A DNA stretch of 64,000 bases from positions 13,231-77,230 of the forward strand of contig CAJFCJ010000051.1 in the NCBI GenBank assembly GCA_904063045.1. Reading direction: 5' to 3'. The position numbers were made by a program, and so were the translations under genes. This document shows, piece after piece, positions 40,026 through 64,000 of this stretch. The first letter of the stretch is position 1, and each line of letters opens with the position of its first letter. This stretch comes from Dimorphilus gyrociliatus (taxonomy: Eukaryota; Animalia; Annelida). A model generated the notes under the pieces. That model was not told the DNA's origin. It saw only the letters and a list, made by a program, of their open reading frames with translations, and did not search any database.

Positions 40026-40075
40026 TGACCTACCATGGTTTCGTCTTCCCCTTTTGCAAAGACTCATCAGGGTCA
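40026..40075 (-). ncRNA. Type I hammerhead ribozyme, intact
   Basis: Identical to the copy at 39417-39466. Confidence 0.92.
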
Positions 40076-40938: not shown

Positions 40939-42000
40939 TTACTGTTGATTTGAAGCTTGGAGAATTGGTCTGTTTAATTTCTTTTTTCTTCCAGTTCTAC
41001 TTTGTTGTTGTTGAAAGACTTCTTTACACTTGACCATAATTTCATTGGTAATCAAGTGTTGAACAATATTTCTCAAAGAAGACATCTTTCCAGGCAGAAC
41101 AATACCATGAAAAGGATCTCCTCTTATGATGGTATTAATATCAATAATTTTTGTAAACATGTTGTTCAAGTTTTCAGATTGTGAGGCTGGTTGTTGATGC
41201 AGATCACTTTTTTTGATGTTATATTGCATAAATAATAAGCATTCATTAGTAACTCCAGTGCTTTTATACAAAGCTTTAAAATTATCATCAGCATCATTAA
41301 TGGTGTTAAAGGGAATGTGAAGTGCTGTTATATGACTTTTTATTTTCCATTTGGATATAATTTCTTTACAATTTTGAAAGGTTAAGCCAGAAATGTTTAT
41401 AATGAGAACAGTTCCAAAAAAGCTGATGTTTCTTTTAACATCTTCTACCTGAATTAAATCTAAGTCACCCAAACTTTCATCACTTAAAAGAAGTAAATTA
41501 ATTTTGTTGGGAAATCCTACAGCTGGTTGTTGTATTTTCATAAGATTGGTAATTTCTTCCTTTCCAAGATTCACTCCAATTTCTGTAAAAGATCTTACCA
41601 TTTCATTAATATTTGAATTGTGTTTTCTATTAATTTTCATGGTATTGTTATATTTTAGAATATCATCAGTTTCATTAAGTTGTTGTAAAATCAATTCTAC
41701 CAATTGTTCCTTGTTGATACTATTTGATATGCCTTCTTCATTAAGCCACAATTTTTCATTGCAAAATTTTTTAAACTTTAACATTTTTTCTACAACATCT
41801 TTCTCATATTGACTTGGATCAAAAGTTGGTGGGTGAATTTTATTGTCTCTTTTAAACCTTTGAAGATGATTATAAAAAGTTCCAAAATTGAAAAATTGTT
41901 CAAAAGAACATTGCAGGAAATGTTCCATTTCAATTGTTTCATTGATGATTATTTGGTCATTTTCTACTCTTTGAACTTGATTTGGTTGCATGTTTGCCAT
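40939..42000 (-). CDS. Element-borne protein with SGNH/GDSL-esterase-like C-terminal domain, 353 aa
   Basis: Open ORF with a splice acceptor 10 nt before the ATG. Motifs: LLLLSDESL, IISKWKI, LHIPFN, GDPFH (block V DxxH-like). Confidence 0.65.
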   Translation of the reverse strand: MANMQPNQVQRVENDQIIINETIEMEHFLQCSFEQFFNFGTFYNHLQRFKRDNKIHPPTFDPSQYEKDVVEKMLKFKKFCNEKLWLNEEGISNSINKEQLVELILQQLNETDDILKYNNTMKINRKHNSNINEMVRSFTEIGVNLGKEEITNLMKIQQPAVGFPNKINLLLLSDESLGDLDLIQVEDVKRNISFFGTVLIINISGLTFQNCKEIISKWKIKSHITALHIPFNTINDADDNFKALYKSTGVTNECLLFMQYNIKKSDLHQQPASQSENLNNMFTKIIDINTIIRGDPFHGIVLPGKMSSLRNIVQHLITNEIMVKCKEVFQQQQSRTGRKKKLNRPILQASNQQ

Positions 42001-42167
42001 TTTGGAAGATCTAAATACAAGAAATTTTTATTGTAAAAGTTTTTGCAATTTTGTAACATAATACAAAAAATAATTTTAAATGAAGAAAGATAGACTACAT
42101 GAACATAGGCTACACTGAACAGAATTAATCATTCTAAACTAAATCCTTCTAAAAATGTATTCAAAGC

Positions 42168-46790: not shown

Positions 46791-49700
46791 CACAACTTGT
46801 TATTCTTTCTTAAACAAATAACAAAAAAGAAACAAAACGTAAACTTTTATTTAATTAGCCTGTTACAAGTGTGACACATCCATTTGAGATACTTTTCTGA
46901 ATAAATAAATTTCAGATTATCCTACTATTTATAAACAGAGTGACGTTCTAATTAAAAACACACTGGTCATTTATTAAAAGGCACTCCTTCAAAAGATGAA
47001 CTGTAGGGAAATTGATAACCTTAATGGTGAACTTTTTTCCTTACAATCTAACGTTGAAATAAAAAAAGAAAAATATTTGTATTTTACATTAATATAGAAT
47101 GCCTGAAAAGGGCTCCAGAAAAATATCTCATTGCATTTATTACAAAGAATCAATTAAAACTGATAAAATTCATAGCCTAATGGCTGTCAATTTTATCTAG
47201 AAACAGAAAACTCTTCTAAACAATTTATAAAGTACTTACAATACTTCTGGAATATTCTTTTAGATGTATAGTTGATGGTAGAATTATTTGAGCAGCAAAT
47301 ACAATACTTCTGATGAGATCCTATTTAGATTTTTTAATATTGAGTTTTTTTACAAAAAAATTATCTTTTTTACTAATATTCTATTTACCTTTCTTTTAAG
47401 TAGATTGATTCTTCAAATGCACTTTTGATGAAAATATGCTGAAAAAATGGTAAGTTTAAAAAGAATTTTGTTTAAAGGGAAAGGTAGACAATAAATCAAG
47501 TAGAAAATCCTTGAAAAAAATTGATACATACATCAGAGTGTAGTCAAGAGACAATCCTTCCTCTATGGTGACGAATGGTAGAATGCCTATAACATAGGTT
47601 TATATACTCTTTGGAGAAAAGACCCCCATGTCAGAAAAGACCCTTGATAAACTGTTATCAAAACATATCACTTTCCAACACAATTTCACATTACATAACA
47701 GGAGATAAAGATTTTCTTATCAAAAACTGACAGGGAACCTGAAAAACCCTGATGGCTATATACAAATGCTAATACTTTATTTACAAAAGAAAAAGAAAGA
47801 AGTTATGTAAAAAAAATTGTTAATTTTGACCTGAATTTAGTAAAATATTTCTGACAGACAACTTTGATAATTATCATAAAACTAAAAATTATGTGTATTG
47901 CACTTTCTAATTGTTTAATTAGTTTTAATTAGAAACTAAAGAATTTCCACAATTTGTTTTTGACATTTGATTGAAAAGCTATATCTCTTGACAGTTAAAT
48001 CTCAAAATGTTAAAAATATTTAAATTTATATGAAATATAATAATGTATACACAACTTTACCTAAATTTTTACTTTCATAGTTGAAATTCTTGTAATAAAT
48101 AGTACTATATCAAATTCTTAAGATATAACTTTCAAGTCAAATAGGTTTTCTCTAATTCTTTTGCATTTAAACTGTCAATATGTGTAAAATTTATTAAAAT
48201 CTATGATAGCAAAAAGGACTTTGTTACCATTATCTAGTCATAAACATTACATATAAGGCTACCCTAAGCTAACGTTTTCAACCTTGAGAACAATAATTTT
48301 TAATAGAAGTAAATTTTGGAAAAAAACGGAGGTAAGGTAAAGTTCAGAATGGAACAGCTGGGAATTGAAGTCAATTGGAAACAACAAAACCATAGACCAT
48401 CTGGCCAACTTATAGCATCTGGATGAGAAATTGGAGGAGCAAAGAAAAAGCCAAGAGAAAAAACATATTGTAAACATTAAGGCTGCCCAAGAAATCTTTC
48501 CCATCTATGTTAAAACCCTAGATTTTATCTATGACACTATTAATTTTAATGATTATTGGAATTTATTCTATTTTTCTATTTCATTTTCAGCCTTTGATCT
48601 GTACTGGTAGGAATAGCTATAAGACTGCCTTTTCAAGCTGAACTAGAACAACCTGGAGCAGTCATACAGAGAGATCAACTATATAACAGTTGTTTCTGTG
48701 CACTAATAATTTTCTTCCTTGTTATACTCTTTAAAATTGAAGGCTTTGGTAACTGAATATTACCTAAAATATTTGGAGCACCTGATGTATATTGGATCCA
48801 GTAATTTTGTACCAAAATTTGTAATAACCAACTTTGATGAAGAGAGGCAGACTAAAAATTTTTTACATTTTACTTTGTTGTTGTTTTATTTGTTTTGAAC
48901 AAAATTTAAAGAATTTAAATTGTTTTCTTTACTTAACTTCTTGAATTGCTCTTTTTCTTGTAAGTTAAATTTTTCAATGATAATAATGTGCAAATTTTTT
49001 TTAATTATAATAATGTTTATTCAAATTTTTGTAACTTATCAATTTCATAATTAAAATTCTTTTAATAAACTGAAATATATCTGATTTTTAAGATTTAACT
49101 TACAAGAGAAATATGTTAATTTTAATTATTTTACATTTAGCTGAAAAATGAGCACAAACTTTTGTATAAACTATTAACTCAATCTGAACTGCACTTGCCA
49201 AAAAAATGAGAAGAGTTGTTCTTTGGATAAAACATATTATTATATTCCTATAGTATTGTCAATTGAAAGAAAGGATAGATTATTGTCACTATAGATGATC
49301 TAGGCAAACCTACAACAATAACACCAACCAATTTTATAAGATTGTCTAAGATACCAATTAGTGATAGGAAATACAACTAGTAAATCTCTTTCTTTTCCAG
49401 ATGTTGGTGTAATTGCCAATTGTGACTAAACTTGAGAGTTTAGCACTGTCATTTTATTTTTATGTTAATTCTGCTGTTCCTGAAGTTGGAATTGTTAAAA
49501 ATTTGAACTTTACTTCTTTTTGTCATCTTTCAATTCTTTCGTTTTATATTATTTAAAATTATTGTCAAGAAAATTGAAAAATTATATATGCTAATAATCT
49601 AATAATAACTTTTAATAGTTTTGAGTAGAAGTACAGGTTTTAACGAACCCTTTGAAGCTTAAAGCCTAGGGTAATATATTTGAAGTTAAGTGTAATGTCT

Positions 49701-49877
49701 GTGTTATTTTTTTTGGGAAGCCATTACATTGGCACCTGACACACATAGCAAGTAGAATAATATACAAAGATTGAAAAAGATATAAAAGGGTTTTAAATAT
49801 AGATTGTAATGTTGGATTAGTAACACTGCATAATTATAATCAAGAACTGTTAATGCAAAAAAATTAGAATGACAAAT

Positions 49878-51410
49878 CTATATTTCACTAAAAAAGTGTC
49901 TAAGTAGGTGATTTTGTTGTTGTTTTTCAGGAAGTTCATTAAATCCACCGTTTTTGGTTAGCAACTTATTTTGTAGTTGCTCAGGAATTGTAATAAAGTT
50001 TAATCCAGCTTTTTTCATATTTCTTTCAGTGTATGTTGTAAAATAATGGCTAGGAAAAACCATTTTCTCTAATTTTATAGGCTGAGTAATAATTTTACTG
50101 GAGGATGTTAAGGCCTTGCTTTTGGTGTAAAAGAAAATTCTTTTGAATGATAACTTCCATTTTAAACATATCTCAATAATATCCATAAACTTTAATTCTT
50201 TAATCTTAATGAATAGTACATTTGGTGCATTTCCAACTGTTTTATCCTTTATCTGGAATATTTCATTTCCTGAAACCTTATCAAAAGAATTATCAGTTAT
50301 TAGTATATAATCAAAATCTTCTTTCCTAAATTCTTTCTTAAATGCTTGGTCAATTTTGACATTTGTCCTCTTTAGGTAAGTAAAGCTGTTTAGCCGTAAA
50401 ACATTCTCAGTCTTCTTTTCTTTGTTCATTCTTTGCTCTTGTACCTTCTCTTTCTCTTTCAATTCTGATTTTTGATGATGCGTTATACTTTGTGCGTTTC
50501 CTGTGTTTAAGTGTTGATCTTGTTGATGCTCCTGTGGTTCAGTTCTTCTCTCAATAACTGGTGCCTTTTTTCCTCCATTTAGCTCTTGCTGATTTGCCAT
50601 TTCTGGTTTTTCTTTGGACTCTTGATGGCATGTTCTTTTTTCCAGTCTAGCTTTCTTTCTCTTTGGTTCTTCTAATTCATTTGTTAAGTCATATGCAATA
50701 ACTTTATCCTTCATGGCTGCCTTTTCTCTTTTTTTCGATATTCTTGGAATAATTGTTTGAGTACATTCATCTTTAACTTTTGGTGATATTTGAATACCAA
50801 TCTCCTGTGTTAATGGCTTATCTACTTGGACTCCAACCTCTTGAATAACTTGTTGTGTCTCTGTTGGTTGAGTAGGCATAGCTTCTTGTATGGTAGTATT
50901 TCCAGTTAATTGTTCCTTCTTGTTAGTCATATTGTCATAAAAATCTAAAAGATCCTCATAAAATTCATTAATATAGCTTTTAGAAAATTCCCTGATATTC
51001 CGTTTACTGTTAAGGACCTCACCATTTACAAAATTTAAAATTTTTATTAATTCTTCCCTAGAATCCACTAGCTGTAGCAATCTTTTTAAATAAAAATATT
51101 GATCAAGTCTCTTTTGTAACTTGTAGAAATTTTTAAAACACTTTTCAACAGTATTTATTAGTTGGGCCTTTACTTCAAACATTTCTTCAAATGTATTATA
51201 TTCTTGAAAGTATTTATAATACTCTAATTTATTATTTGCACCTAAATCTGTTCTCTTCACTTCATTGTTTAAAATATGATCCCAATGATTGTGTGTTTTG
51301 GAATTTTCTGCTTTATAATAGCATTGAAGTATATATCGCAGTTGAACTTTTAAATTGTTTACATTCACATCAATATGTGGATGAGCATATGGCAGAGTTT
51401 TGTACGGCAT
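49878..51410 (-). CDS. Element-borne protein (conserved N-domain, charged linker, SGNH-like domain), 510 aa
   Basis: Long open ORF in very AT-rich DNA with an acceptor 19 nt before the ATG. Paralogous to the 25.0 and 32.1 kb ORFs. Motifs: YILITDNSF, CLKWKL. Confidence 0.75.
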   Translation of the reverse strand: MPYKTLPYAHPHIDVNVNNLKVQLRYILQCYYKAENSKTHNHWDHILNNEVKRTDLGANNKLEYYKYFQEYNTFEEMFEVKAQLINTVEKCFKNFYKLQKRLDQYFYLKRLLQLVDSREELIKILNFVNGEVLNSKRNIREFSKSYINEFYEDLLDFYDNMTNKKEQLTGNTTIQEAMPTQPTETQQVIQEVGVQVDKPLTQEIGIQISPKVKDECTQTIIPRISKKREKAAMKDKVIAYDLTNELEEPKRKKARLEKRTCHQESKEKPEMANQQELNGGKKAPVIERRTEPQEHQQDQHLNTGNAQSITHHQKSELKEKEKVQEQRMNKEKKTENVLRLNSFTYLKRTNVKIDQAFKKEFRKEDFDYILITDNSFDKVSGNEIFQIKDKTVGNAPNVLFIKIKELKFMDIIEICLKWKLSFKRIFFYTKSKALTSSSKIITQPIKLEKMVFPSHYFTTYTERNMKKAGLNFITIPEQLQNKLLTKNGGFNELPEKQQQNHLLRHFFSEI

Positions 51411-53014
51411 AAACCATTTGATACTCAGGCTATAGGAAAGGTTAAGAGTTATTAATTTCTCACAATTTAAAATTTATGTCAAATATTAAAATACATTAAA
51501 AAGTATATAAGGCTAATGGTGAATTAAAAATGTATGAACAATATAAAGTCTACTTCACACATGTATAAAAAGCCTTTTTTAAATGTGACTTTACCAACTA
51601 ATGACAATTTTGCCAAGGAATATTAATTATTTTAAATGTAATACTTAGTTATATTACTTTGAATTAACATTAGGAAATTGTTTATATGTCTTAAAAAGCT
51701 GATTACCTAAAACTTATAAGACCTACATTTGTGAAATTAATTCGGCACATATATGCCACAAATATATGTATTAAAGAAATATTTAAAACCATCAAATCAC
51801 TTACATCCTTCATAGTTCATTTTAAATATCTACATTTGCAACCAAATAGATTATTGTACAATAACCTTTATTATTCATACTATTTACATATTTTTATATA
51901 TATTTTAACCTACTATTTATTAATTTACAACTTTTAACCTATAATAGCAAAAGAATCAAGACTCTTACATCTTAATATTTTGTATTTCTTGCTTGATACA
52001 GCTTAGAATTTTTCTAATATCCTACAAATAAAAATATTTGCTATGTCTTTCTTCTTCTAAATTAACTTTTAAAAGATATTATTGTTGGATATTCACACTA
52101 TTTTTTAATTTCGCCTATTCCTAACATTATATATCTCTTTAAATATAAGATACATGAATAAATAATTCAATTAACATTTAATGCTCTTGATCAATTTAGT
52201 GCAAAATGCAAGAAATCAATCCAAAAAATACAAATATTACAATGGTCAATTCAGAACTAAAAAGTAAGGAATCAACCAGAAATCACTCAAATAATATACT
52301 AACTTTGAATTGGACATGATGATTTTTCTAAGAAAAGGATTGAAAAAGAAAGTTTTCCAGAAGTGTCTGTGGGAATCTATTAAAGAATGCAAAAAAGATG
52401 AATTAATAAGAAGGAAACTGTATAAATAAATCATCTTACCTGTATCAAATTCTTCACAGGAAGCTGTTATGGAACGATAAATTCATGGAAAAGGAGTGAA
52501 AATTTAGTGAAATTTTTGTAGATAACTTTTTTATTTATAAGTACTACCTTGAATATAATTGTTTTTGTCTTTAGAACAGCGTAGTAGAAGTGGAACTTTT
52601 CTAAAATTAATATATAACAATTAAACATTTGTAACAGAAGTTTTTGCTAAAACAGTTGAAAAACTGTAAGTAACTTACTAGCACAAAAGTATGATCTTCA
52701 CTTAATTGTGACGAATGTTATAATGAAGAAATAACCAGTATATATAGAAGGTATTGACTGTTTGAAAACCTTTTTACACAATGGAGAAAGGCTAATTAAA
52801 GAATTAAATCAGTGCCAGTTCTTTAAAAACAATTGATCCAACAAGTGCTTGTTTAAGGGTTGCTTTGTCAAGGAAATGTGTAAACAAGCTAATTAGGGTA
52901 TGACATTTAAGGCTTTTCTTAATTTGTAAAGAATCTGTCTTTTCTGGCTAAATTTTATTAGCCTATATAAATCATTTTAAATGTAGAAAGAATTCATTTG
53001 ACATTTAACGCAAA

Positions 53015-53317
53015 ATGGAACCATGGATGGTTACAGTTCAAAAGCACTATGCAGTTCTTGTAAACATTGAAAATTATTTAGAGGAGCTTGACGAAACTGA
53101 TGGATTGTGTTTGTATATCATGCTAAGTGAAAAGCAAATAGTTCTGATGAGATTATTTAATAAGGAGAAAAATGAATATATGCAGTCTGCTTTAAATTGT
53201 TGTGTTCAAAAGATGGCAGTCCTGAAGAGGAAACTTCAAGAAAAGTATGATTTTCATTTATGTTCTAAAAGGATGGAAGAAATATTTGGAATTAACATTT
53301 ATGACTATTGGAAATAA
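53015..53317 (+). CDS. Small orphan protein, 100 aa
   Basis: ATG start, upstream acceptor at 52986, AATAAA ~35 nt after the stop. Confidence 0.45.
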   Translation: MEPWMVTVQKHYAVLVNIENYLEELDETDGLCLYIMLSEKQIVLMRLFNKEKNEYMQSALNCCVQKMAVLKRKLQEKYDFHLCSKRMEEIFGINIYDYWK

Positions 53318-54818
53318 TAGCAAAAATTTGCTTTTTTGGTTATTGTTTAATTCAATAAAATGTTATACTATAATAATAATAGTTTTTTTAACTGAAATTT
53401 TATGATATAAGCAATGGATAGTTTTGTGAGAATGTTTCTTATCTGCCGTTTTTGAGATAAGCTGATTATAGGGAACAAATCTTTTCAAGTTTTTTTATCA
53501 TGACACTTTCACATATTTTGACTGGAGATAGCGTTCACATGGGAAAAACAGTAGAAATGTTTCAAGACATTAGGTAATTGTATATTATATATATATATAT
53601 CACTTGGAATTAACCACTAAATTACAGTTTTGCTTTACTCAATTACTGTTTACCCAATTTATCAAGCTTTTTTATATATATAGATTATTCTGGCTTGTAT
53701 TATATTGTGCAAAGATTTAACAAGCATTTATGTTTGTTCTGATCCTTCTTTCATGATATGTCATTTTGTCAAATTTTATGAATGATTTATACTGAATACT
53801 TTATTGCATTATTTTAATTTAATTAATAGTTTTACTATTTTATAGCATACATTGTTTTTTGAATTATATGATAGCTGGAGTAGGTGGAGTTTTCTTTCTC
53901 TGAGATAAGTGTTAGCCAATGGGGAGCCAGTACTATCTCTTGATTCGATAAAAAGGGAGTTTTTCATTTTAGTTATTTACAATCAACTTGGTCTCCATTC
54001 GGTAAGGATGATAGTTCTCTAATGCATAAAATTAAAGTAACATTTTCTTTAACAGAATCTTCAATCTTTCAATTCTTTCATTGTCAAGATATTTAAGTTA
54101 AAATATAACTAGGTGAGTTAATGTTTTAATTTATTTAATTGGTTTCATATTCTCTTTAATATTACAATTCTTTCAGCGCTTCATTACGGTTGGTCCTCTT
54201 AATTGCAAGAAAATCCTAAAAATATTTTAAAGTATGTATTTCTATGTTGTTCTGTCCTGTACTTCTCCCTCATAGTTGTATTTTATGCAACTAGAGAGAT
54301 GTTCATTTATATATGATAATTATATAATACTGTTAATATCTGGAAGAGCATATGCAGCACAGGCATGAAATCTTTATTATTGTAAATATTTTTTTAGGTT
54401 GTGTTGGAGTTTCTTTAAATTTTTTTGATTTACACTTACTGAAAAAAGAGTGGAAAAATAAGATGAATATACTACTTCAAATTTAACCATTGAAATTTTC
54501 AACAAACTCTAATAAAAAGAAATTTTTCAAGCCTAAAATTATTTGAAAACTACTACTTTACCATGGTATACTATGCAAACCAAACATTTAAAAAAAAAAT
54601 ACCAGTTTCATGGCCATAATAAAGATTTTTTGCCTTGCTGTATTAATAAAACATAAGGGTTTTGAAGATGCCATTTACGTAGAACTTATCTAGATTAGAT
54701 ATTTTCTGTGGACAATATCTATCTCTTGCATATCTTCATTTGTATATGGCAGTATAGAAAAACCTTTAATTTATTAAAGTTTTGTAACAAATATATTGAA
54801 ACTTGGTTGTTGCTACAG

Positions 54819-55142
54819 ATGATAACATTTATTATTGATCTCATTCAAGAAGTTAACCATAAATTGTATCAAATAATTGGGCTTTTTAACAAAAACATGC
54901 TTTTAGATGAAGCATTTTATAGTTTGTTTTGCAATCATTATATTAAGGATTTGAGCTATGTTCAAGATATACTAGAACTAATATATGATTATAATGAACA
55001 TAATAATTTGATGTATGCAGAGTTACAAGATAAAATATTTAAAACCATTATCAATATTAATACTGTAACAAATTTAAAAGACATACTTGTGGAATTTGAT
55101 TTGCATGTGTTACCAACTGATTTTCTGTTCAATCTAAATTAA
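54819..55142 (+). CDS. Small orphan protein, 107 aa
   Basis: ATG directly after TTGCTACAG, in frame with ORF 54708-55142. Confidence 0.45.
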   Translation: MITFIIDLIQEVNHKLYQIIGLFNKNMLLDEAFYSLFCNHYIKDLSYVQDILELIYDYNEHNNLMYAELQDKIFKTIININTVTNLKDILVEFDLHVLPTDFLFNLN

Positions 55143-55174
55143 AACATGGCAAGACAGAGATTTTGATAGTAAAA

Positions 55175-55211
<37 letters not shown>

Positions 55212-55392
55212 CCTAATGTATATATATATATATATATATACATTAGTGTCACTAAGTCTTTGTTTTCATAAATATCTGACGAATTAATTGCTTTTTAAAT
55301 TATAAATTTTATTCAAAATTGTAAAAGTCATTATATTAGATAATTTTTTTGGCTTCTTTTACAGACTAATCCATTCTTGCTATATATTTCCA

Positions 55393-55665
55393 ATGAATGA
55401 CTTTGAATATTTTTATGATAATAGAACTAAACACATTAACAATCTCTTGGAAATGTTAAATAGTGATAATACAACATTGAATGAGAAAACATATGGAGAA
55501 TGGGAAGAATGTTTATGCATAACTTTTGATGTTTTGGAAGACAATATCATGGTAATGAAATCTGTTCAACATTGGGAAGAATATTTGAAAAGAAAAAACC
55601 TTAACAAACTTTATGATAATTTGATTTCCAGTATTCTTAATTATGTTATTAAATATCATTGTTAA
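55393..55665 (+). CDS. Small orphan protein, 90 aa
   Basis: ATG start with an acceptor at 55364. Begins MNDFEY, like MSEFEY of the 57279 ORF. Confidence 0.45.
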   Translation: MNDFEYFYDNRTKHINNLLEMLNSDNTTLNEKTYGEWEECLCITFDVLEDNIMVMKSVQHWEEYLKRKNLNKLYDNLISSILNYVIKYHC

Positions 55666-55908
55666 GATGAAAAATTACATGTATGGTTTTTCCCATTGTT
55701 AGCTTATTAATTTGTTTTTTTTTGTCACTTGACATAGTATTCTGAAAGAAATTAGTTGGTAACAATCTATTTGCTCCTCTTTTTTAAACTTTTATATAAC
55801 TCAGGATAAATAAAATTTGAAAAGATTAATTCCTACTTTTATCTAGCTTTAAAAACCAAATTGAATCATAAGTATCATATTTATATTTATCTTTTTTTTA
55901 ACCAGATT

Positions 55909-57126
55909 ATGGCATATAGAAATGAAAAGCTTTTCAAATTTAAATCAAAGAAAACTCATGCTAAAATGGGTACAAGTAAAAATCAATTAAGTGATTGTGA
56001 AGTAGAAACAATACATAAACCACCTGAGTCTGTTCAATGTTTAAAAAGAGATGATGAAACAAGTAGAGCATGTTCAATAGAAAACAAGAAACAAACAACC
56101 TTAATCCAATGCTTCAGTAAAAAGAGAAAGAATGAAGTGGTAGATATTATTCATGTACCAGAAGCAGATTGTACTAAAGAAAAGGATTCAGAAACAGTTT
56201 CTGAAATAGAGATATGCGACAAACTTAGTCAACCAAAGAGAAAGAAACAAATTGATATTGTTGAAATATCATCATCATCACAGTCATCCACAGAGGAGTT
56301 AATGAGAAAAATATCAACCAATTTTGAGGAGGAGTTTTTAATGAAAGATTCCAATTTGCAAATTGATGAAACCTTAAAGAAGAAATTACTACATCAACAG
56401 AAATGTGATGATATCAAATTTGAAAGTGGTTTAACTGTATTTGTAAGGAGAAAAAGCCAATCGTTTATAAATTTTCTTGAACATTTCTGTAAAAATAGGC
56501 CTTTTGTAGCCATTGATATCCCACAATTAATAAGACAAGTTCCCCCCCAGAAAGAAATTAAATCAAAGTATTTAATTATAACTGATACAAGCTTTGATTA
56601 TGATAAGAATACCTTAGCTCTTAACATACTAAAATTTGGTTTAGATAACGAATTATACATAATCCATATTGAGGATTTAATGGCAAATGATTTGCCAAAG
56701 ATACTAAATGATTGGAAATTTGAATGCAAACAAATTGTAATACATTTGTTAGAACATCCAATTGTTATTAACAATTATCTGGAGAACTTTTACAGAGAAT
56801 TTAAACTAATATCTGATTCAAACCAAGTTTTTATATGTATAACAATAAAAATTAATAATATACCAAGGTTTTGTAACTTTCCTTTTAAAAATTGTGACAA
56901 ACTGGTTGAGGTAGGTAATAAGAATCATTTAGAAAATAAATTTGTTAAGACTTATTATCTTCCAAATAATGAAACTATCCTCAAGAATCCCTATATAATA
57001 ATTATCCAATTTTTAGTAAATTTTAACAAAGGGTCTGTAATAGAAGTACCAGATTTAAAAAAGCTTGTTAATCAACACAACAAAAACAAAGATAAATCTT
57101 CAAAAGATAAATTGTTAGATTGTTAG
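55909..57126 (+). CDS. Element-borne protein with SGNH-like C-terminal domain, ~405 aa
   Basis: ATG 3 nt after TTTTTTTTAACCAG. Motifs YLIITDTSF and ILNDWKF are shared with the paralog family. Confidence 0.7.
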   Translation: MAYRNEKLFKFKSKKTHAKMGTSKNQLSDCEVETIHKPPESVQCLKRDDETSRACSIENKKQTTLIQCFSKKRKNEVVDIIHVPEADCTKEKDSETVSEIEICDKLSQPKRKKQIDIVEISSSSQSSTEELMRKISTNFEEEFLMKDSNLQIDETLKKKLLHQQKCDDIKFESGLTVFVRRKSQSFINFLEHFCKNRPFVAIDIPQLIRQVPPQKEIKSKYLIITDTSFDYDKNTLALNILKFGLDNELYIIHIEDLMANDLPKILNDWKFECKQIVIHLLEHPIVINNYLENFYREFKLISDSNQVFICITIKINNIPRFCNFPFKNCDKLVEVGNKNHLENKFVKTYYLPNNETILKNPYIIIIQFLVNFNKGSVIEVPDLKKLVNQHNKNKDKSSKDKLLDC

Positions 57127-57278
57127 TAATCTTTGTCAAGAAATTAAGAAATTCATTGTGAAATGAAGGTTATGTGAAATTTACATAAAAACATTTTTTA
57201 AGCTAATAATTATGTGATCTGTTTGAAAAATTTGAATACAAATTCTTTTTTGTTAATTCTCTTTTTTTTTACCAAAAG

Positions 57279-57578
57279 ATGAGTGAATTTGAATACAAGA
57301 TTGAGAATAAGCTGTATTACTTGACAATTGTCAAAGATGAAATATCTGGACTTGGATTTTTCAACCCATTATCCAGAAATCAAGTTTATGATATTTTTAC
57401 AAAACTGGTAGAGGAGGAAGAAGAATTCATGGGACTCTATCCTAAAATTAGTGGAGTGGATCAAGAAAAACTAAAAGAATTACTTGATACATATCATGAA
57501 ATATTTTGTTATATTGTAGAAGTATTATTTGATATTAATGATGTATTGTTCCAGGTTCATGACAATTTATTTTATTAA
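57279..57578 (+). CDS. Small orphan acidic protein, 99 aa
   Basis: ATG directly after a T-rich acceptor; AATAAA ~35 nt after the stop. Confidence 0.45.
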   Translation: MSEFEYKIENKLYYLTIVKDEISGLGFFNPLSRNQVYDIFTKLVEEEEEFMGLYPKISGVDQEKLKELLDTYHEIFCYIVEVLFDINDVLFQVHDNLFY

Positions 57579-58459
57579 AAGATATAATCATTTTATCAAA
57601 CCTATTAAGTTAAATAAACATTATTGATGTGGCTTAAATAAAAAGAACAACAAAACCTAAAATAAATATTCATAACAACTAAATTTATAAAACATTTAGG
57701 TAAAGATGGGAGTTTCCATTTAATTGACTAAAGAGTTCTTTCTAAAATGTGAAGAGTTCTTTGGATTCTTTTGATGCATGTGATTGATAATGTACTTCTC
57801 TTATAAGCTGGAACTTTAATTTAATGAAAATATTCCAAAATAAAGAGTTATAGACAAGAGAATAAGAAATTTTCAGAATTTTTGCTTTGAAAAATAAAAT
57901 TACTTTGAAAAATGTAAATATTTTTAAATATCAAGATCTAACTTACAAAAGAAATATATTATTTACTCATATTTGTTGCTTAAACTCTAATTGTACAAAA
58001 AAATTCAAATAAACAACTATGACAACACTTAATAATAACATTTATTTGTTGAAATTTTTACTATGATTTTAAAAAGAAAGCTTTATAATGTGACAAAATA
58101 TTAAAACTATTGTTCAATTATTTTAATATATTTTGTTAGGTGAAAGGGCTAGGGTTTAGGGTTAGGAAAAAATGGTTTGAAACTTAATTATATCTATATA
58201 GATAACTATTCATTTTAATAGTATTGAATGACAATATCTCGTAAGTTTAAAGATACATTGACTAAGTACTTGTTTGATATTGAGCTTACAATACAAAAGA
58301 GTCTACTTTTCCTGTAGTAGTAACTGTTCACATAAAAAAACTTGAAAAAAGATAACATTTTATAATGTATTACTAGCCTATTACTACAATTTCAAGCCGT
58401 TTTAATTAAAAAGAAAAAAGTCAATATTTAATTCTTCTTTAAAAGAAATATATGAAAAT

Positions 58460-59020
58460 ACTGACAGTATAAAGCATAGAATTTAGGGTATCTTTCCATA
58501 AATCTGTAGATACTCTTACTTGAGCAGTATTTGGATTAATGGTAAAAAATTGAGGTGCTGGGAACACTCCTACCAGCTGGTATTCAATTTTTCCTTCATT
58601 GTCTCTATCTTGTGTTGTCAAATCAAGGAGGAGTGGACTGATCACTGACTCTAACTAGAATCTGATTTAAAGGAAAATAATAGAATTATGACATAAATCT
58701 ACAAAGAAGACAGTTTTATGTTTAAGATTTTACTGTATCAGTATTGTGAGTTAAAGATTGAAGATTGTATTTGAGACTAATTGATCCAGTTGATGGATCA
58801 ATATGATATCTTTGCATTACATCTTCTGTACCAGTTATTTCATATCTGAAAAATATTAAAATGAATATACACATATTTTATTAACAAATATAATGTTACC
58901 TTAGTACATCATCCTGTATCCTGATCATTTGCTTTTACTTTAATTATTTGGTGACCAATTTGATATCTATCATTAATCGAAACTCTGTATCTACTTTGCT
59001 CAAATTTCAGTTGATAAAAG
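58460..59020 (-). pseudogene. Cadherin-repeat gene fragment with introns
   Basis: Three exon pieces: KFEQSRYRVSINDRYQIGHQIIKVKANDQD; YEITGTEDVMQRYHIDPSTGSISL; ILVRVSD and TTQDRDNEGKIEYQLVGVFPAPQFFTINPNT. They are flanked by GT-AG sites and carry stops and frameshifts. Confidence 0.75.
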
Positions 59021-59464
59021 TTCCTATTAACTCAAAGGATTAGAGAAAAAATTGCAGAGGAAGTTACAGGTCATTTATCATCTATAACTTTGATTTCACA
59101 AGTGAAATACTGTTTAAGGTCAACTTGTTATTTAAAACATACAATCACTCATTCGAAAAAATCAAAGGATGTCTGAATATTTCTGATTATCAAATTTCTC
59201 AGATGATGGCTTTGAATTTTAAAATATGACCTGATTTATTTAAATTCCAGAAAACAAACTTCATTTCTAATAAATTTAGAACGCCAATCAATTACCAAAA
59301 ATGTTGAAATAATCAGGTCCAAAAAACAATTTTTTGTTGAATCAATGATATTTTTGCAAGAGATCTCAAACCAGAAACTAATCAGAAAATAGGACAATGT
59401 CATCATGAAATTTTTTTAATTGATCATTTGGACCATAGAAAGAAAAATCACAGTCAGGGGCAAC

Positions 59465-59884
59465 ATGTTCGGATTTGGTAAGGCAAAGGATGAGGAAAAA
59501 GAAAAGTCAAAAATTGAAACCAAAAAGAACCAGTCAGAAGATCAGAAACCTGATAAAGATACAAAAAGAGTTAAAAAGGGCAGCGTAGAAGGATTACAAG
59601 AGGAGCCACTCAAGGAAAAACAACAGGAGGAAACAAGGAAATCAGAAGAGAAGCAAACTGAAAAAAACGACACAGATGAAAAACAGAGCAAAGAACAGGA
59701 AAAATCTGAGTCAAAACTCAAGAAAGACCAAGATTTGCTGAAAGAAGAGCAAAAGGCTCTAGAAAAAGAGAAATCTAAGCTAAAAAGTGATCAGGAGATG
59801 TTTCTCAGCAGGAAGACTGACAGTTACGAGGAAAAACATGAAAAGCTCATCGATCTCTTCAAAAATGAATCTAGAATTTCATAA
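59465..59884 (+). other. K/E-rich ORF running into GPI remnants
   Basis: MFGFGKAKDEEKEK..., low complexity, with a GGG-like motif just upstream of the ATG. Identity unknown. Confidence 0.35.
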
Positions 59885-60368
59885 CAGAAAAGATGTGAAT
59901 GTTCATTTTGTATCAAATGTTGATCAGGTTGAAATGTTAAAGACATTCGAGAAAATTGATCCAGAAGAGACTCTGTTTATTGTTGTGAGCAAAGATTCAC
60001 AACACAGGAGACCATGTCAAATGCCCAGGTTGCCTTAAAAATGATTGAAGAAAAAACTGGAAAAAGCTGAGCAGAAATCGCTGAAAAATAATTCAAAGGA
60101 TTACAAATTCTTCCCAGGCGACAGACCATCAATAACAGTGGCATATTCCAGATTGACACCTGAGATCGTAGGGGCTCTGATCACATTCACAGAGCACAAA
60201 TTGTACGTTCAGGGTCTTTACTGGAAAATTAATTCATTTGACCAATTTGGTGTGACACTTGGCAAATCTGTTGCGTTGGACATCCTCAAGGCCATGGATG
60301 AGGATGTAAAGCACATGGACACAGGCTCAATGTGTCTTCTGGGCCTTTACAAAGAGTTAAATGATTGA
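59880..60368 (+). pseudogene. GPI: Glucose-6-phosphate isomerase, internally deleted and frameshifted, microsporidian-like context
   Basis: VHFVSNVD...DPEETLFIVVSK, then shifted TTQETMSNA, then FPGDRPS...EHKLYVQGLYWKINSFDQFGVTLGK. Contains stops and a large internal deletion. Confidence 0.85.
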
Positions 60369-60517
60369 GAAACTGAAAAATAAAGATTTTCTTGAGTTCT
60401 TTCAAATTTTATGGTGAAATTCAAAGGCAGTCTATTCTGAAATATTTTTTAGATATTTTACTTCTAAAAAAGTGACTTAAATCATATAAAACTTATTTGT
60501 GTTGATTTTACCATCCA

Positions 60518-61137
60518 ATGAAGGACTTGATTTCCAGGATTGAAAGTTTCAAAAACCCAGATCTTACAGCTGAAAGAAAGATGCAATTTGCAGTGGCCAG
60601 ATTATCTTGCCCATCTGAGTCAAAATTTCTCAATACTCTCAATACGCCGTGCCATTTTTGTGATGTCAGACTGGGTGACTGGGACGAGGAGGACGATCCG
60701 TTCATTGAGCACAGTAAATGAGCAGAAAAATGTCCAATTTACAATTTAAGAATGAAGATTTCTAGAAAAAAGACTTTCAAAGACATGCCTTTTGAAGAAG
60801 CGCAGATTTCCAAGATGGTGAAAAACCATCAAAAAGAACAGAAACTGAAATTGCATCATAAGAAATGGGCAAAACTGACAACGACTTCTTTTATGTTGAA
60901 CTTCTCAAAGACAACTACAACAATATGTTGCAAAAAATACAGACACCTGAATTTCAACTGACAGAATCTGAAAGGGAAGAAATTGAATTTCTGTTGTCAT
61001 TGCTCAAATCGACAGGACCGTTTTTGAAGGTCAAAGACGTTTTGACTGAGGCTGTAAAAATGGCAGGTAAAAAAATTGAAAAAGAAATGGAAAAAGATAT
61101 CAAAGAGATCCAAGACATGATCTCTGCAGCAGAATGA
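60518..61137 (+). pseudogene. BIR-domain (survivin/Bir1-like) gene with nonsense codon and frameshift
   Basis: RIESF...CHFCDVRLGDWDEEDDPFIEHSK*AEKCP is a BIR signature. It continues in frame into 60752, then shifts into 60865-61137. Confidence 0.75.
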
Positions 61138-61208
61138 AATTATAAATAAAAAATGGGTGTTTTTCCTGTTTAAAGTCTTTTTCTAAAAGTCTTAGAGAAG
61201 AATTGATT

Positions 61209-62260
61209 TTATTTGAGGAATATTGCAGGCTCATCTTTTCTGCATTCATTCTGTGTGCAATTCGCCTGATGAATTTCATAGATGTCCCATTTTGACATTT
61301 TCATTGTATTGACCAGTTTCACAAAAAGTGAAAATTCAGTATTTTTATTCAGACAAAATTTTCTACCCATATGACAACAGGTCTTGATATTGTATCCAGC
61401 AATTTTGCAAACATCGATGGATCCGTTGCACACTCCTCTATAGATGGCATCACTGCAATCGCCCAAATGTATAATATTTGAGCCTAATCTATGAAACAAA
61501 TTCTGAATCATCGTTTGCTTCTCAATTTTTTTAAGCTCTAAAGGGGTCACAATCTGTAGATCACAGGGTGCTGCAAATGCTAGAACATATTCCTGATTCT
61601 TATGGCCTAGAATTGACACTATAGCAGCACCCATGGAATGCCCAGTGAGCACAATTTTATTTTTTGGATGTTTGTGCTTGACTTGATCATAAATTCTCTG
61701 TGCTGCATCGATGTATAGCACTTCTTTCATTCGATCATATGATGGCTTGCAATTGAAAATGATATTGTCGAATAATTTGTCTTTTTGTGATGTATTGCTG
61801 GAATCTATTCCCAGAATTGACAGAAATGTGCCTTTAAAGGCGATTACAGTCGTGTTGCCTGACGTATAAATTATTCCTTTGAGTGAATCGGTGATAAACC
61901 TTCTTCTTCTACCAACAAAACTGAGGAATGATTGACATCTGAAATGTTTCTAGATTCCATTTCTATCTCAACATCTTCAAAATCTCCTATGGAATAAGTC
62001 TGATGAGCCAATTTTGCAATTTTATGAATAAAAAGCCGTTGTTTTGGACTGAATTTGAACGGCACGAGTGATTCGTGTGGATCTCAGAAGAATAACTTGT
62101 TCATTTTGAATATTCGGCTGATTCGAGCAATATTTTTCAATCCACCGATAAGAAATTCCAGAAATTGTTTTACACCCGTATCATTGTCTGCAGTTGTAGA
62201 AATAATTTCATCTATATCACAAAAAACGGTACAAATGAGAGCAAATAAACTTAATCACAT
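61209..62260 (-). pseudogene. Atg15-like class 3 lipase, decayed
   Basis: GHSMG nucleophile motif, plus VIAFKGT, DKLFDNIIF, HLGDCSDAIYRGVCNG and CHMG. The N-terminus M*LSLFALICTVFC is in frame with 61871-62065. Two TGA stops and a frameshift near 61870. Confidence 0.8.
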
Positions 62261-62455
62261 GTTATTGGCTGATTAGATTTACAAAAATACAATTTTGAAA
62301 CAAATTGTTTAGAATTGTGAGAAATGAGATATTTGTCCATGATCAAAGCCAAATATTCTGATTAAAATGATTATTGCATCATATTAAGATTGTTTCTAGT
62401 TCAATACCTGTAAAATCTAAAAAAAATTCTAGAATTAAGAAACTTGTACACAATT

Positions 62456-63285
62456 TTATTCTTCATCCATCTTAGGTGCTATAAAATAGTTGATATGCCC
62501 ACCTTCTTTCAATTTAAACTCAAAGAAAACAGGCTCGTTCACTCCTAAGCACAATTTTATATTTGGGCAATATCTGGCTGTTTTTGTAACACAGTTCATA
62601 TATTTCATAGAAATTTCAACTGAGACTTCCTCTGTGATGTTCACTCTGATGTTGTATTTTCCAGTCTCAGCCGCCTTATTTTTTGTTTTAGAGCTGATCA
62701 TTTCACCACTTTGTGATAAATTTATTGTTGAATCAGATGCTTCAACTGTGATATATTCAGCAAAATTTCCAGCAGATTGTCTCATCATAAGGAAATCAGA
62801 GCTTTTCATCTCTGCTTCTGCTGTAAACTCAATTGCTGGAATATTGTATGATTCACTGCCAATATTTTGCAATTTTATAACATAATCAGCTGTGCAGGCC
62901 TCTGTTTCAAATTTAATATTTAAGAATTCTGGATTGTCTTCACTTTGTAAATAAAATGATGTATTTGACTCAATTTTAAACACTCTTTAATTTTTAGTCG
63001 GAGTGTCAGTGGTTTGTCACACCTGAACATGTCAAATGTTGATTCAGGTAAAAATACATTCATCATTGTCACATTCATTGCATCCATAAATTGAATTGAA
63101 AGGCCCTCCTGTGTTATATTTATATCGACATCATCCACTATCTCTGCAACACTTTCAATGATTTTTCTGAAAAGGGCTGTTCTCATAATTGTGCTCTTTT
63201 CTTCATCCTCCAGTTGTTTTTTCGCTCTTTTTTGTGAGTTATCTTCCTCGACAGGCCTCTTCTCATCAATACTGAGTTCGAACAT
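62456..63285 (-). pseudogene. PCNA: PCNA, microsporidian-type N-terminal extension, frameshifted near 62980
   Basis: RTALFRKIIESVAEIV, GLSIQFMDAMNV, FRCDKP, EISMKYM and EPVFFEF...YFIAPK, split over two frames. No introns. Confidence 0.88.
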
Positions 63286-63636
63286 TTGAGGGTAAAAAAT
63301 TGTGATTTGGAAAAATTACCGAAAGGGACCTGAGAATGTGAGAAAATTGAATTTTTTTTCGAAAAGTTACCATTGAGACCTGCCACGTGATACGTTTAAT
63401 GACAAAACCAGGCCATATTAAAGAAATTTGAGCTGTTTGAGACAACAAGTTTTCTAGGATTTTTGAAAAAATAATTGAGGAGTGTTTTTCTAGAACCTGT
63501 AAAATAAGGTCTGGAATTTTAGACTTTTCCAATTAATCAAACATCAGTCAGAGCTCAATATTCGATGAAAACACATTCCAGAATCAGCAAAAAGTTCCAT
63601 TTATGTTTCAGGATATGTTAGGGTTAGGTTAGGTTA

Positions 63637-63719
63637 GGGTTAGGGTTTGGTAAGGGTTATGGGTTAGGCCACTCACACAACTCTGGTAATGTTTTTGGGA
63701 ACTGGTTAGCTAGTGTTCC
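63637..63719. repeat. 83-bp copy of module B embedded between telomeric repeats
   Basis: Base-for-base match to 19030-19112. Confidence 0.92.
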
Positions 63720-63851
63720 GGTTAGGGTTAGGTTAGGGTTAGGGTTAGGGTTAGGGTTAGGGTTAGGGTTAGGGTTAGGGTTAGGTTTAGGGTTAGGGGT
63801 TAGGGTTAGGTTAGGGTTAGGTTAGGGTTAGGGTTAGGGTTAGGGTTAGGG

Positions 63852-63892
<41 letters not shown>

Positions 63893-64000
63893 GGTTAGGG
63901 TTAGGGTTAGGGTTAGGGTTAGGGTTAGGGTTAGGGTTAGGGTTAGGGTTAGGGTTAGGGTTAGGGTTAGGGTTAGGGTTAGGGTTAGGTTAGGGTTAGG
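63720..64000 (+). repeat. Telomeric (TTAGGG)n array with TTAGG variants
   Basis: Continuous to the end of the window. A short proximal array is also present at 63618-63645. Confidence 0.98.

What the first reader, a model, noticed from the sequence alone, without database searches (positions are those of the whole stretch)
59300..63617. Decayed microsporidian-like gene block integrated next to the telomere
Seen: five tightly packed, intronless genes (K/E ORF, GPI, BIR, Atg15-like lipase, PCNA) with intergenic gaps of roughly 70-200 bp, unlike the intron-rich host genes. CCC- or GGG-like motifs sit just before several ATGs. From memory, the MFEL...KRAK...RT.LFR PCNA start and the short Atg15 lipase are microsporidian traits. 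The four recognisable genes all carry stops or frameshifts, which a live contaminant's PCNA and GPI should not. Inference: parasite-to-host DNA transfer captured at a chromosome end, a rarely reported direction.
Basis: partly seen in the sequence, partly recalled or inferred. Interest (0 to 1): 0.88.

Follow-up and report, generated by a model that had tools for sequence, protein, structure and literature searches.

The report
Dead microsporidian genes at annelid telomere
A 4.1-4.5 kb piece of the genome of a microsporidian parasite related to Pseudoloma neurophilia lies, broken beyond use, between a fragment of a host cadherin gene and the telomere of a chromosome of the small annelid Dimorphilus gyrociliatus, which makes it a rare fossil of DNA transfer from a eukaryotic parasite to its animal host.

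Summary
The window is the last 64 kb of Dimorphilus gyrociliatus contig CAJFCJ010000051.1.

**Origin.** Positions 59268-63370 are collinear, promoter-proximal DNA included, with three contigs of the microsporidian Pseudoloma neurophilia (71-88% nt identity). The genes are GPI, a BIR protein, an Atg15-type lipase and PCNA. The same gene order is found in three other microsporidian contigs. The "K/E ORF" is not a fifth gene. It is the K/E-rich N-terminal extension of the Pseudoloma-type GPI.

**Decay.** All four genes are dead:
- deletions of 458 and 596 bp in GPI;
- frameshifting deletions of 1, 19, 67 and about 100 nt;
- five premature TGA codons.

Illumina-derived contigs show the same lesions.

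**History.** Divergence from Pseudoloma arose mostly under purifying selection (dN/dS 0.11, dS 0.9). The donor was therefore a related but different species. The window lineage carries an excess of replacements (62 against 12), roughly 4-5% neutral decay.

**Integration.** The block has host sequence on both sides. To the left are a 711-bp duplicated Fat4-like protocadherin fragment with introns and Penelope-like telomeric retroelements. To the right are TTAGGG repeats holding an 87-nt module found again 44 kb inward.

I judge it a real, old, non-functional insertion. Still untested: GC-corrected depth, long reads across the junctions, and presence in other strains. I found no published case of microsporidian-to-animal integration. 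The scan had already flagged another decayed microsporidian-like block on a different contig of this genome (s1-080798), which I did not check.

The parts
58136..58167 (+). Short degenerate telomeric tract. It marks the distal end of the Penelope-like or Terminon-like retroelement layer and the start of the terminal unit that holds the foreign block.
   Evidence: Sequence read; pattern match at 58156-58167; similarity to the terminal array.
58168..58383 (.). AT-rich stretch of unknown origin, 216 bp.
   Evidence: No similarity elsewhere in the window. An Illumina contig (record 1, identical) runs from 57742 to 58428 across it.
58384..59094 (-). A 711-bp fragment of a host Fat4-like protocadherin gene with three exon pieces (about 58442-58645, 58725-58847 and 58912-59026) and short introns. 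It duplicates a gene located elsewhere in the genome.
   Evidence: Translations. The 68-aa exon matches giant multi-repeat proteins (up to 19 stretches, E 5e-85). These are cadherins (25 Pfam Cadherin repeats) named protocadherin Fat 4-like in Lingula and Patella. The run X1 holds a 93-98% identical paralogue that leaves the window sequence at 58384 and at 59094.
59095..59267 (.). Stretch of 173 bp between the end of the host duplicate and the first detectable similarity to Pseudoloma. It is probably fast-evolving microsporidian intergenic DNA.
   Evidence: No alignment to L010 upstream of its position 1585. The Illumina contig record 5 covers 59065-59850 without a break.
59268..59465 (+). Microsporidian DNA upstream of GPI, including the GGGG(C/T)AACATG motif.
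   Evidence: 78% identity to Pseudoloma L010 1585-1779.
59466..60383 (+). GPI pseudogene. Lesions: a 458-bp deletion at 59868/59869, a 1-bp deletion near 59989, TGA at 60068, a 596-bp deletion at 60084/60085, and TGA at 60366.
   Evidence: Pfam PGI on two pieces; alignment to Pseudoloma GPI P0016/L010; tree.
60518..61137 (+). BIR-domain (survivin/IAP-like) pseudogene. Lesions: TGA at 60719 where Pseudoloma has CGA Arg65, and deletions of 16, 71 and 13 nt at 60825-60867 that shift the frame.
   Evidence: Pfam BIR; 74-79% nt identity to the Pseudoloma BIR gene at L010 4114-4824.
61209..62260 (-). Atg15-type lipase pseudogene. Lesions: TGA as codon 2 (62255-62257), TGA at 62084-62086, and a 67-nt frameshifting deletion at about 61918. 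It also has in-frame changes of +6, -15 and -12 nt.
   Evidence: Pfam Lipase_3/Hydrolase_4; 78-80% nt identity to Pseudoloma L012, whose product is annotated as the lipase that disintegrates autophagic bodies.
62456..63285 (-). PCNA pseudogene with a single 19-nt deletion at about 62987 that shifts the frame. It is otherwise open.
   Evidence: Pfam PCNA_N and PCNA_C; 86% aa and 85-88% nt identity to Pseudoloma PCNA P0002/L002.
63286..63370 (-). Microsporidian DNA upstream of PCNA with the conserved ACCCT(C/G)AAATG motif.
   Evidence: The alignment to L002 extends to window 63370. The motif is shared by six microsporidian relatives.
63371..63616 (.). Stretch of 246 bp of unknown origin between the last detectable Pseudoloma similarity and the telomeric repeats. 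It is probably microsporidian intergenic DNA.
   Evidence: No match to L002 1-818 or to the rest of the window. It is covered without differences by Illumina contig record 8.
63617..64000 (+). Terminal TTAGGG array holding an 87-nt host telomere-associated module (63636-63722).
   Evidence: Pattern matches. The module is 99% identical to 19029-19115 of the same window.

Best explanation
The block is a non-functional fossil. A contiguous piece of about 4.1-4.5 kb of the nuclear genome of a microsporidian related to, but not the same species as, Pseudoloma neurophilia entered the germline of the Dimorphilus gyrociliatus lineage. It became fixed at a chromosome end and has since decayed neutrally. 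The piece carried GPI, a BIR protein, an Atg15-type lipase and PCNA with their short promoters.

Inferred mechanism: free parasite DNA from an intracellular infection of germline cells was joined by end-joining repair at an eroded or broken chromosome end. It was joined together with a 711-bp piece of a host Fat4-like protocadherin gene and a 216-bp filler. The new end was then healed by telomerase.

Shown: the microsporidian origin, the collinearity, the gene death, the host sequence on both sides, and the agreement of the short-read contigs. Inferred: the capture mechanism, the germline route, and an age equal to about 4-5% neutral divergence.
For: (1) Identity of the genome. The reverse complement of locus L001 from GCA_904063045.1 contig CAJFCJ010000051.1 equals the end of the window.

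(2) Microsporidian origin. PCNA is 86% identical to Pseudoloma neurophilia, and the next hits are 69% or lower. DNA identity to Pseudoloma is 87.6% for PCNA, 81.4% for GPI, 77.9% for BIR and 79.8% for the lipase, and it extends into upstream non-coding DNA. The GPI remnant is sister to Pseudoloma with 100/99 support inside Microsporidia.

(3) Synteny. The order PCNA-lipase-BIR-PGI is found in L003, PCNA-lipase in L006, PCNA-lipase-BIR in L008 and GPI-BIR in Pseudoloma L010.

(4) Gene death. Deletions of 458, 596, 67 and 19 nt, about 100 nt net in BIR, and 1 nt. Five premature TGAs at aligned codons, four of them at Arg CGN codons of Pseudoloma.

(5) The lesions are not long-read errors. Contigs built from an Illumina run cover 60306-63609 with 0-1 differences.

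(6) Relaxed constraint on the window lineage only. Polarised replacements are 62 against 12 (p 3e-9). Three-point dN is 0.072 against 0.027. The GPI tip lengths are 0.093 against 0. The overall dN/dS of 0.11 with dS 0.92 shows that most of the divergence predates the transfer.

(7) Host DNA on both sides. To the left are Fat4-like cadherin exons with short introns and Penelope-like elements. To the right is a telomere array holding an 87-nt module repeated at 19029-19115. The window has no N.

(8) No intact or variant copy at 90% identity or more is present in the Illumina run over the block.
Against: The same assembly is reported by other first-stage readers to hold several intact microsporidian contigs (unchecked). 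Parasite DNA was therefore probably in the sample, and a chimeric join has a real prior.

Short-read depth of the block (307-405) is about five times that of the neighbouring contig at 57742-58428 (69). It is also above the window-like cadherin fragment (about 200-220). I can only attribute this to the library's G+C bias and could not measure it.

The short-read graph branches at 59094, where 46 nt are shared with the paralogue. The link across the left junction therefore rests on elimination and on the PacBio contig, and I could not inspect long reads.

The only informative DNA run (X1) is of the same study and probably served to polish the assembly. There is no evidence from a second strain or from single animals.
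Confidence: 0.8

Rival explanations
1. Assembly chimera or contamination. The block belongs to a microsporidian that lived in the sequenced worm culture, and the assembler wrongly joined it to a host chromosome end.
For: Other first-stage notes describe several intact microsporidian contigs in this assembly. The authors ran four rounds of decontamination against fungi and protists, which shows that such DNA was present. Block depth differs from the adjacent AT-rich host contig.
Against: All four genes, including the essential PCNA, are broken, and the Illumina contigs confirm it. A chimera would need two wrong joins, because host-specific sequence lies on both sides. The window has no gaps. 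Short-read contigs abut at 59065-59094 and run from the lipase through PCNA beyond 63609. No second, intact version at 90% identity or more is in the run. No other Pseudoloma-like PCNA from this assembly is in the protein collection.
Confidence: 0.08
2. A decayed duplicate inside a living microsporidian genome. The block, the cadherin fragment and the telomere would form the subtelomere of a parasite chromosome that had itself taken up host DNA, making the transfer host-to-parasite.
For: Microsporidia are known to acquire animal genes and transposons (my own knowledge of the literature, not tested here). Block depth is higher than that of the neighbouring contig.
Against: The contig continues for 58 kb into intron-rich animal genes (kinase, LRR receptor) and animal Penelope-like elements. 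In related microsporidia PCNA lies in an internal region next to a PI3/PI4 kinase, not at a chromosome end. No intact paralogue is seen in the same run.
Confidence: 0.04
3. RNA-mediated capture. The terminal unit 58168-63616 was copied onto the telomere by the reverse transcriptase of the telomere-attaching Penelope-like elements, through template switching onto host pre-mRNA and a long read-through microsporidian transcript. In this reading it was not ligated as DNA.
For: The unit begins right after a short telomeric tract (58136-58167), as the retroelement layers of this chromosome end do. Follow-up notes on other contigs describe junctions that suggest copying from RNA onto telomeric DNA.
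Against: The block holds promoters, spacers and genes in both orientations. The cadherin piece keeps its introns. No retroelement 3' module or hammerhead lies at 58168 and after. Nothing here separates this reading from DNA capture.
Confidence: 0.08

Closest known systems
Pseudoloma neurophilia genome (GCA_001432165.1; contigs LGUB01000246, LGUB01000818, LGUB01000564)
   Same: The same four genes are present: GPI with its K/E-rich N-terminal extension, BIR, the Atg15-type lipase, and PCNA with the MFEL...RTALFRK N-terminus. The upstream CCC/GGG motifs match. DNA identity is 71-88%, and the GPI remnant is sister to it in the tree.
   Different: dS is about 0.9, so the donor was another species. 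The window copy is broken in every gene and lies in an annelid chromosome. In the fragmented Pseudoloma assembly the genes sit on three small contigs.
Nuclear insertions of intracellular symbiont or organelle DNA (Wolbachia insertions in insects and nematodes, NUMTs, endogenous viral elements)
   Same: DNA of an intracellular resident was copied into the host germline as a contiguous multi-gene piece and then decayed neutrally by stops, frameshifts and deletions.
   Different: The donor here is a eukaryotic (fungus-related) parasite, and the insertion lies at a telomere. The comparison rests on my general knowledge. My literature searches found no microsporidian example.
Foreign genes in telomeric regions of bdelloid rotifers (Gladyshev, Meselson and Arkhipova 2008; from memory)
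   Same: Foreign DNA lies in a subtelomere together with telomere-associated Penelope-like or Athena-like retroelements and interstitial telomeric repeats.
   Different: In bdelloids many foreign genes are intact, expressed and of bacterial, fungal or plant origin. Here one block comes from one identifiable parasite lineage, it is dead, and no host RNA run holds it.

Membership tests
Microsporidian genomic DNA (Pseudoloma lineage) | The closest homologues of the encoded proteins are microsporidian | tested here: met
   PCNA is 86% identical to Pseudoloma neurophilia. The GPI and lipase orthologues are named Pseudoloma and Trachipleistophora proteins.
Microsporidian genomic DNA (Pseudoloma lineage) | Phylogenetic placement inside Microsporidia | tested here: met
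   In the GPI tree of 25 rows the window is sister to Pseudoloma with 100/99 support, nested among microsporidia, with bacteria as outgroup. Only 164 columns were used, and only GPI was treed.
Microsporidian genomic DNA (Pseudoloma lineage) | Conserved microsporidian gene order and non-coding similarity | tested here: met
   The order PCNA-lipase-BIR-PGI is seen in L003, L006, L008 and L010. Upstream DNA aligns with Pseudoloma.
Microsporidian genomic DNA (Pseudoloma lineage) | Intronless compact genes with a CCC/GGG-like motif just upstream of the ATG | tested here: met
   Spacers are 71-195 bp. The motif is present before PCNA and GPI, is mutated before BIR, and is absent before the lipase in both species.
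Germline nuclear insertion of parasite DNA (horizontal transfer into the host) | Physical continuity with host DNA on both sides | tested here: met
   The contig has no gaps. A Fat4-like cadherin fragment lies to the left and a host telomere module to the right. Short-read contigs are adjacent at 59065-59094 and run beyond 63609. Long reads were not inspected.
Germline nuclear insertion of parasite DNA (horizontal transfer into the host) | Read depth equal to host single-copy DNA | tested here: inconclusive
   Depths are 307-405 for the block, 286-356 for a host paralogue, about 200-220 for the window-like cadherin fragment and 69 for the 22.6% G+C neighbour. Depth rises with G+C, and the authors report strong G+C bias. 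No genome-wide baseline was available.
Germline nuclear insertion of parasite DNA (horizontal transfer into the host) | Present in uninfected individuals and in independent strains | not testable with these tools
   Only one informative DNA run was served (X1). X3 of the same species laid nothing at all, not even the host flanks, so it says nothing.
Pseudogene | Disabling lesions confirmed in reads, and relaxed selection | tested here: met
   For the lesions. Illumina contigs are identical over them. Replacement excess is 62 against 12, and dN is 0.072 against 0.027.
PCNA / PGI / BIR / Atg15-type class 3 lipase | Pfam domain matches above the curated cut-off on the remnants | tested here: met
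   Scores against cut-offs: PCNA_N 52.8 (20.3), PCNA_C 59.9 (23), PGI 32.7 and 80.7 (22), BIR 26.7 (22.9), Lipase_3 25.0 (22). The Atg15 assignment rests on the annotation of the orthologues and on a JGI 'lipase ATG15' hit at E 5e-11. No solved structure matched.

The most novel reading that the evidence does not exclude
Dimorphilus gyrociliatus chromosome ends repeatedly capture DNA of a microsporidian that infects its germline. This block would then be one of several independent insertions; another decayed block was flagged on a different contig. Telomeres that are maintained with the help of Penelope-like retroelements would act as a general entry gate for foreign eukaryotic DNA in a non-bdelloid animal.
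Probability: 0.2. Interest if true: 0.85.

Novelty: new variant of a known kind. Interest (0 to 1): 0.62.

Why it matters
Transfers involving microsporidia have been described from animal hosts into the parasites. I found no report of the opposite direction.

- **A clean example.** This is a datable case of a eukaryotic intracellular parasite leaving a multi-gene piece of its genome in an animal germline.
- **A past infection.** It records that a Pseudoloma-related microsporidian infected the Dimorphilus lineage. The known Pseudoloma infects fish nervous tissue.
- **A mechanism.** The patchwork junction of host gene fragment, parasite DNA and new telomere points to capture of free DNA during repair of a chromosome end.
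- **A database error.** The PCNA remnant is listed in public databases as the Dimorphilus 'DNA sliding clamp PCNA' (DgyrCDS14602), with an invented intron over the 19-nt deletion. It could mislead phylogenies and contamination screens.

Tried and rejected
- **Recoding of TGA as Trp.** I first considered this because a BIR stop lies where many BIR domains have W. I rejected it because the Pseudoloma codons at the TGAs are Arg (four) or Cys (one), and frameshifts and large deletions are also present.
- **Giant-virus origin.** The language-model atlas placed the PCNA fragment nearest to Nucleocytoviricota clusters. I rejected this because the sequence search gave 86% identity to Pseudoloma, and the atlas holds only clusters of 50 or more members.
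- **K/E ORF as a separate gene.** Rejected.
- **Multi-copy subtelomeric family.** The fivefold depth contrast suggested it. It is not supported: only one copy of the lipase ORF is in the assembly, there are no variant letters in the block, and depth tracks G+C. One low-depth variant that skips 121 nt (59963-60085, depth 25.6) remains unexplained.
- **RNA evidence.** No host RNA run holds PCNA. Two unrelated runs hold 5-6% of the words.
- **Searches that gave nothing.** tRNA and Rfam scans of 57.5-64 kb were empty. The PDB sequence search with the intact lipase orthologue was empty. Exact look-up of the 175-aa PCNA ORF found nothing on record.
- **X3.** This run of the same organism laid no contig at all, host flanks included, so it is uninformative.


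Full report
**What the window is.** Locus L001, fetched through the PCNA-like protein P0001, comes from Dimorphilus gyrociliatus assembly GCA_904063045.1, contig CAJFCJ010000051.1 (77,230 bp). Its reverse complement is identical to the last 11.5 kb of the window. The window is therefore the terminal 64 kb of that contig. It holds no N. The assembly was made from PacBio RS II reads (PBcR, Quiver), polished with Illumina reads (Pilon), and decontaminated four times against bacteria, algae, fungi and protists.

**Check of the observation.** Pfam recognises PGI on two pieces, BIR, Lipase_3/Hydrolase_4, PCNA_N and PCNA_C on the open pieces between 59787 and 63285. Six-frame reading shows that each gene is interrupted. 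The array of TTAGGG repeats begins at 63617. The 'K/E ORF' (59466-59884) is the start of the GPI gene. The Pseudoloma neurophilia GPI (P0016, 683 aa) carries a K/E-rich extension of about 160 residues that begins MFGFGKAKEEEKEKSKIE, and the window ORF begins MFGFGKAKDEEKEKSKIE. The block therefore holds four genes.

**Origin.**
- The PCNA fragment finds Pseudoloma neurophilia PCNA at 86% identity. The next relatives, unnamed contigs from public runs, are at 69% or below.
- At the DNA level the window aligns with three Pseudoloma contigs:
  - L010 (GPI then BIR) over 59268-61153;
  - L012 (lipase) over 61200-62334;
  - L002 (PCNA) over 62452-63370.
- Identity over aligned bases is 81.4% (GPI), 77.9% (BIR), 79.8% (lipase) and 87.6% (PCNA).
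- The similarity runs into non-coding DNA upstream of GPI (about 195 bp), of the lipase (about 74 bp) and of PCNA (85 bp).
- The short motifs before the start codons are shared: ACCCT(C/G)AAATG before PCNA in the window, in Pseudoloma and, as ACCCT close to the ATG, in five further relatives; AGGGG(C/T)AACATG before GPI.
- The gene order PCNA, lipase, BIR, PGI recurs in microsporidian contigs L003, L006 and L008 from three other runs. There the genes are intact, at 266-284, 370-374, 244-267 and 521 residues.
- In a tree of GPI proteins from named microsporidia, the window remnant is sister to Pseudoloma with 100/99 support (164 columns). The Pseudoloma tip has length 0 and the window tip 0.093.
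- The lipase orthologues are annotated as the lipase that disintegrates autophagic bodies (Atg15), and a JGI 'lipase ATG15' is a distant hit.

**State of the genes.** Measured against the Pseudoloma coding sequences:

| Gene | Lesions |
|---|---|
| GPI | Lacks 458 bp at 59868/59869 and 596 bp at 60084/60085; 1-bp deletion near 59989; TGA at 60068 (Cys TGT in Pseudoloma); TGA at 60366 (Arg CGT) |
| BIR | TGA at 60719 (Arg CGA); deletions of 16, 71 and 13 nt around 60825-60867 |
| Lipase | TGA as second codon (Arg CGA); TGA at 62084-62086 (Arg CGT; CGA and CGG in the outgroups); 67-nt deletion near 61918 |
| PCNA | One lesion only, a 19-nt deletion near 62987 |

Four of the five aligned TGAs lie on Arg CGN codons. 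A single C-to-T change of CGA gives TGA. Whether CpG methylation of the host played a part is only a conjecture. Nearly all indels are deletions.

These lesions are not long-read errors. Contigs that Logan built from run X1 of the same study cover 60306-61823 with one difference and 61825-63609 with none. X1 is presumably the HiSeq library.

**History read from the substitutions.**
- Over 1,085 aligned codons, the window and Pseudoloma differ by dN 0.10 and dS 0.92, a ratio of 0.11. Differences are concentrated at third codon positions. Most of the divergence therefore arose while both lineages were living parasites, and the donor was a species distinct from P. neurophilia.
- With outgroups, 62 amino-acid replacements fall on the window lineage and 12 on Pseudoloma (binomial p 3e-9). 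A three-point split of dN gives 0.072 against 0.027.
- The excess of polarised base changes on the window branch is 36, 22 and 30 at codon positions 1, 2 and 3. This is close to the even spread expected without selection.
- I read the excess dN of about 0.045 as a rough measure of neutral decay since the transfer. It assumes equal rates in the two parasite lineages beforehand, and converting it into years would need a mutation rate that I do not have.

**Is it in the host chromosome?**

*Left side.*
- A short degenerate telomeric tract at 58136-58167 closes the large Penelope-like element that other readers noted at 39187-58140.
- Then come 216 bp of unknown origin.
- Then comes a 711-bp segment (58384-59094) with three exon pieces and short introns on the minus strand.
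- Its 68-residue exon matches proteins of 2,800-4,000 residues in up to 19 places. The best of these has 25 Pfam cadherin repeats and is named protocadherin Fat 4-like in Lingula and Patella.
- Run X1 holds a second version of this segment, 93-98% identical. It leaves the window sequence exactly at 58384 and at 59094. The segment is therefore a duplicated piece of a host gene, and 59094/59095 is the likely junction with the foreign DNA.

*Right side.* The repeats hold an 87-nt module (63636-63722) that is 99% identical to 19029-19115, deep in the host part of the window.

*Short-read contigs.* Record 5 covers 59065-59850 and overlaps the window-like cadherin contig by 30 nt. Record 8 runs from 61825 through PCNA to 63609 and continues for 720 further letters (one search gave the run, another the contigs).

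*Other copies.* No contig with alternative letters lies on the block, so no intact close relative (90% or more) is in that run. The assembly holds one copy of the lipase ORF.

**Weak points.**
- Contig depth is 307-405 on the block. It is 286-356 on the paralogue, about 200-220 on the window-like cadherin piece, and 69 on 57742-58428.
- Depth rises with G+C: 22.6% gives 69, 29% gives 220, and 32-40% gives 307-405. The authors mention a strong G+C bias of this library. I could not obtain a genome-wide baseline, so the depth test is inconclusive.
- The de Bruijn graph branches at 59094 because 46 nt are shared with the paralogue.
- X1 is not independent of the assembly.
- X3, a second run of the species, laid nothing, not even the host flanks, and is uninformative.
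- Other first-stage notes report several intact microsporidian contigs in this assembly, and one more decayed block. All are unchecked. A live parasite in the culture raises the prior of a chimera. Against this, a chimera would need two false joins and would not explain dead PCNA and GPI.
- No host RNA run holds the PCNA sequence.
- No tRNA or Rfam family is present.

**Explanation.** The block does nothing now. The best-supported account is that DNA of a germline-infecting microsporidian was captured at a chromosome end, together with a piece of a host gene and a short filler. The capture was most simply by end joining, followed by new telomere synthesis. An RNA-mediated route through the telomere-attaching Penelope-like elements of this species cannot be excluded. 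It is less simple, because the block holds promoters, spacers and genes on both strands, and the cadherin piece keeps its introns.

**Comparison and novelty.** The case resembles Wolbachia insertions, NUMTs and endogenous viral elements in how it arose and decayed. It resembles the telomeric foreign genes of bdelloid rotifers in where it lies. It differs in its donor, a eukaryotic parasite, and in being a single, traceable, dead block. Four literature searches found no report of microsporidian DNA integrated in an animal genome. That library is incomplete, so this is absence of evidence only.

**Database note.** The protein DgyrCDS14602, listed in UniRef as DNA sliding clamp PCNA of D. gyrociliatus, is this pseudogene. 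Its gene model skips the damaged part.

Noticed in passing
window 62456-63285 (gene model DgyrCDS14602, protein P0001): The public annotation presents the microsporidian PCNA pseudogene as a 249-residue Dimorphilus 'DNA sliding clamp PCNA'. An invented intron removes about 28 residues around the 19-nt deletion.
   Followed up: yes
window 59963-60085: Run X1 holds a low-depth contig (25.6 against about 400) that skips 121 nt inside the GPI remnant. It may be a rarer allele or a second copy with a further deletion.
   Followed up: no
window 59019, 59339, 61512: At these three positions all Illumina-derived contigs disagree with the assembly (A>C, G>C, C>T at full depth). These are residual consensus errors or fixed differences.
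   Followed up: no
window 59242, 59493, 59526: Contigs of X1 match the window only from or up to these points and continue into other sequence. Those at 59493-59526 lie in the low-complexity K/E region. The one at 59242 is unexplained.
   Followed up: no
L003 (SRR21609248), L006 and L011 (SRR16156441), L008 (SRR26596545), L004 (SRR26958235), L005 (SRR21969544): Public runs of other studies hold contigs of undescribed microsporidia related to Pseudoloma, with the same PCNA-lipase-BIR-PGI neighbourhood. The SRR16156441 species also has the K/E-extended GPI (685 aa).
   Followed up: partly
window 63636-63722 and 19029-19115: An 87-nt non-telomeric module embedded in telomeric repeats occurs twice, 99% identical. 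One copy is at the very end and the other is 44 kb inward next to interstitial TTAGGG tracts. This fits stepwise terminal additions.
   Followed up: partly
window 29251-31128 and 35801-37587: Two paralogous pairs of long ORFs (378/154 aa and 351/152 aa) are flanked by inverted repeats of 123-129 nt (28655/31708 and 35019/37825). They look like DNA transposon copies.
   Followed up: no
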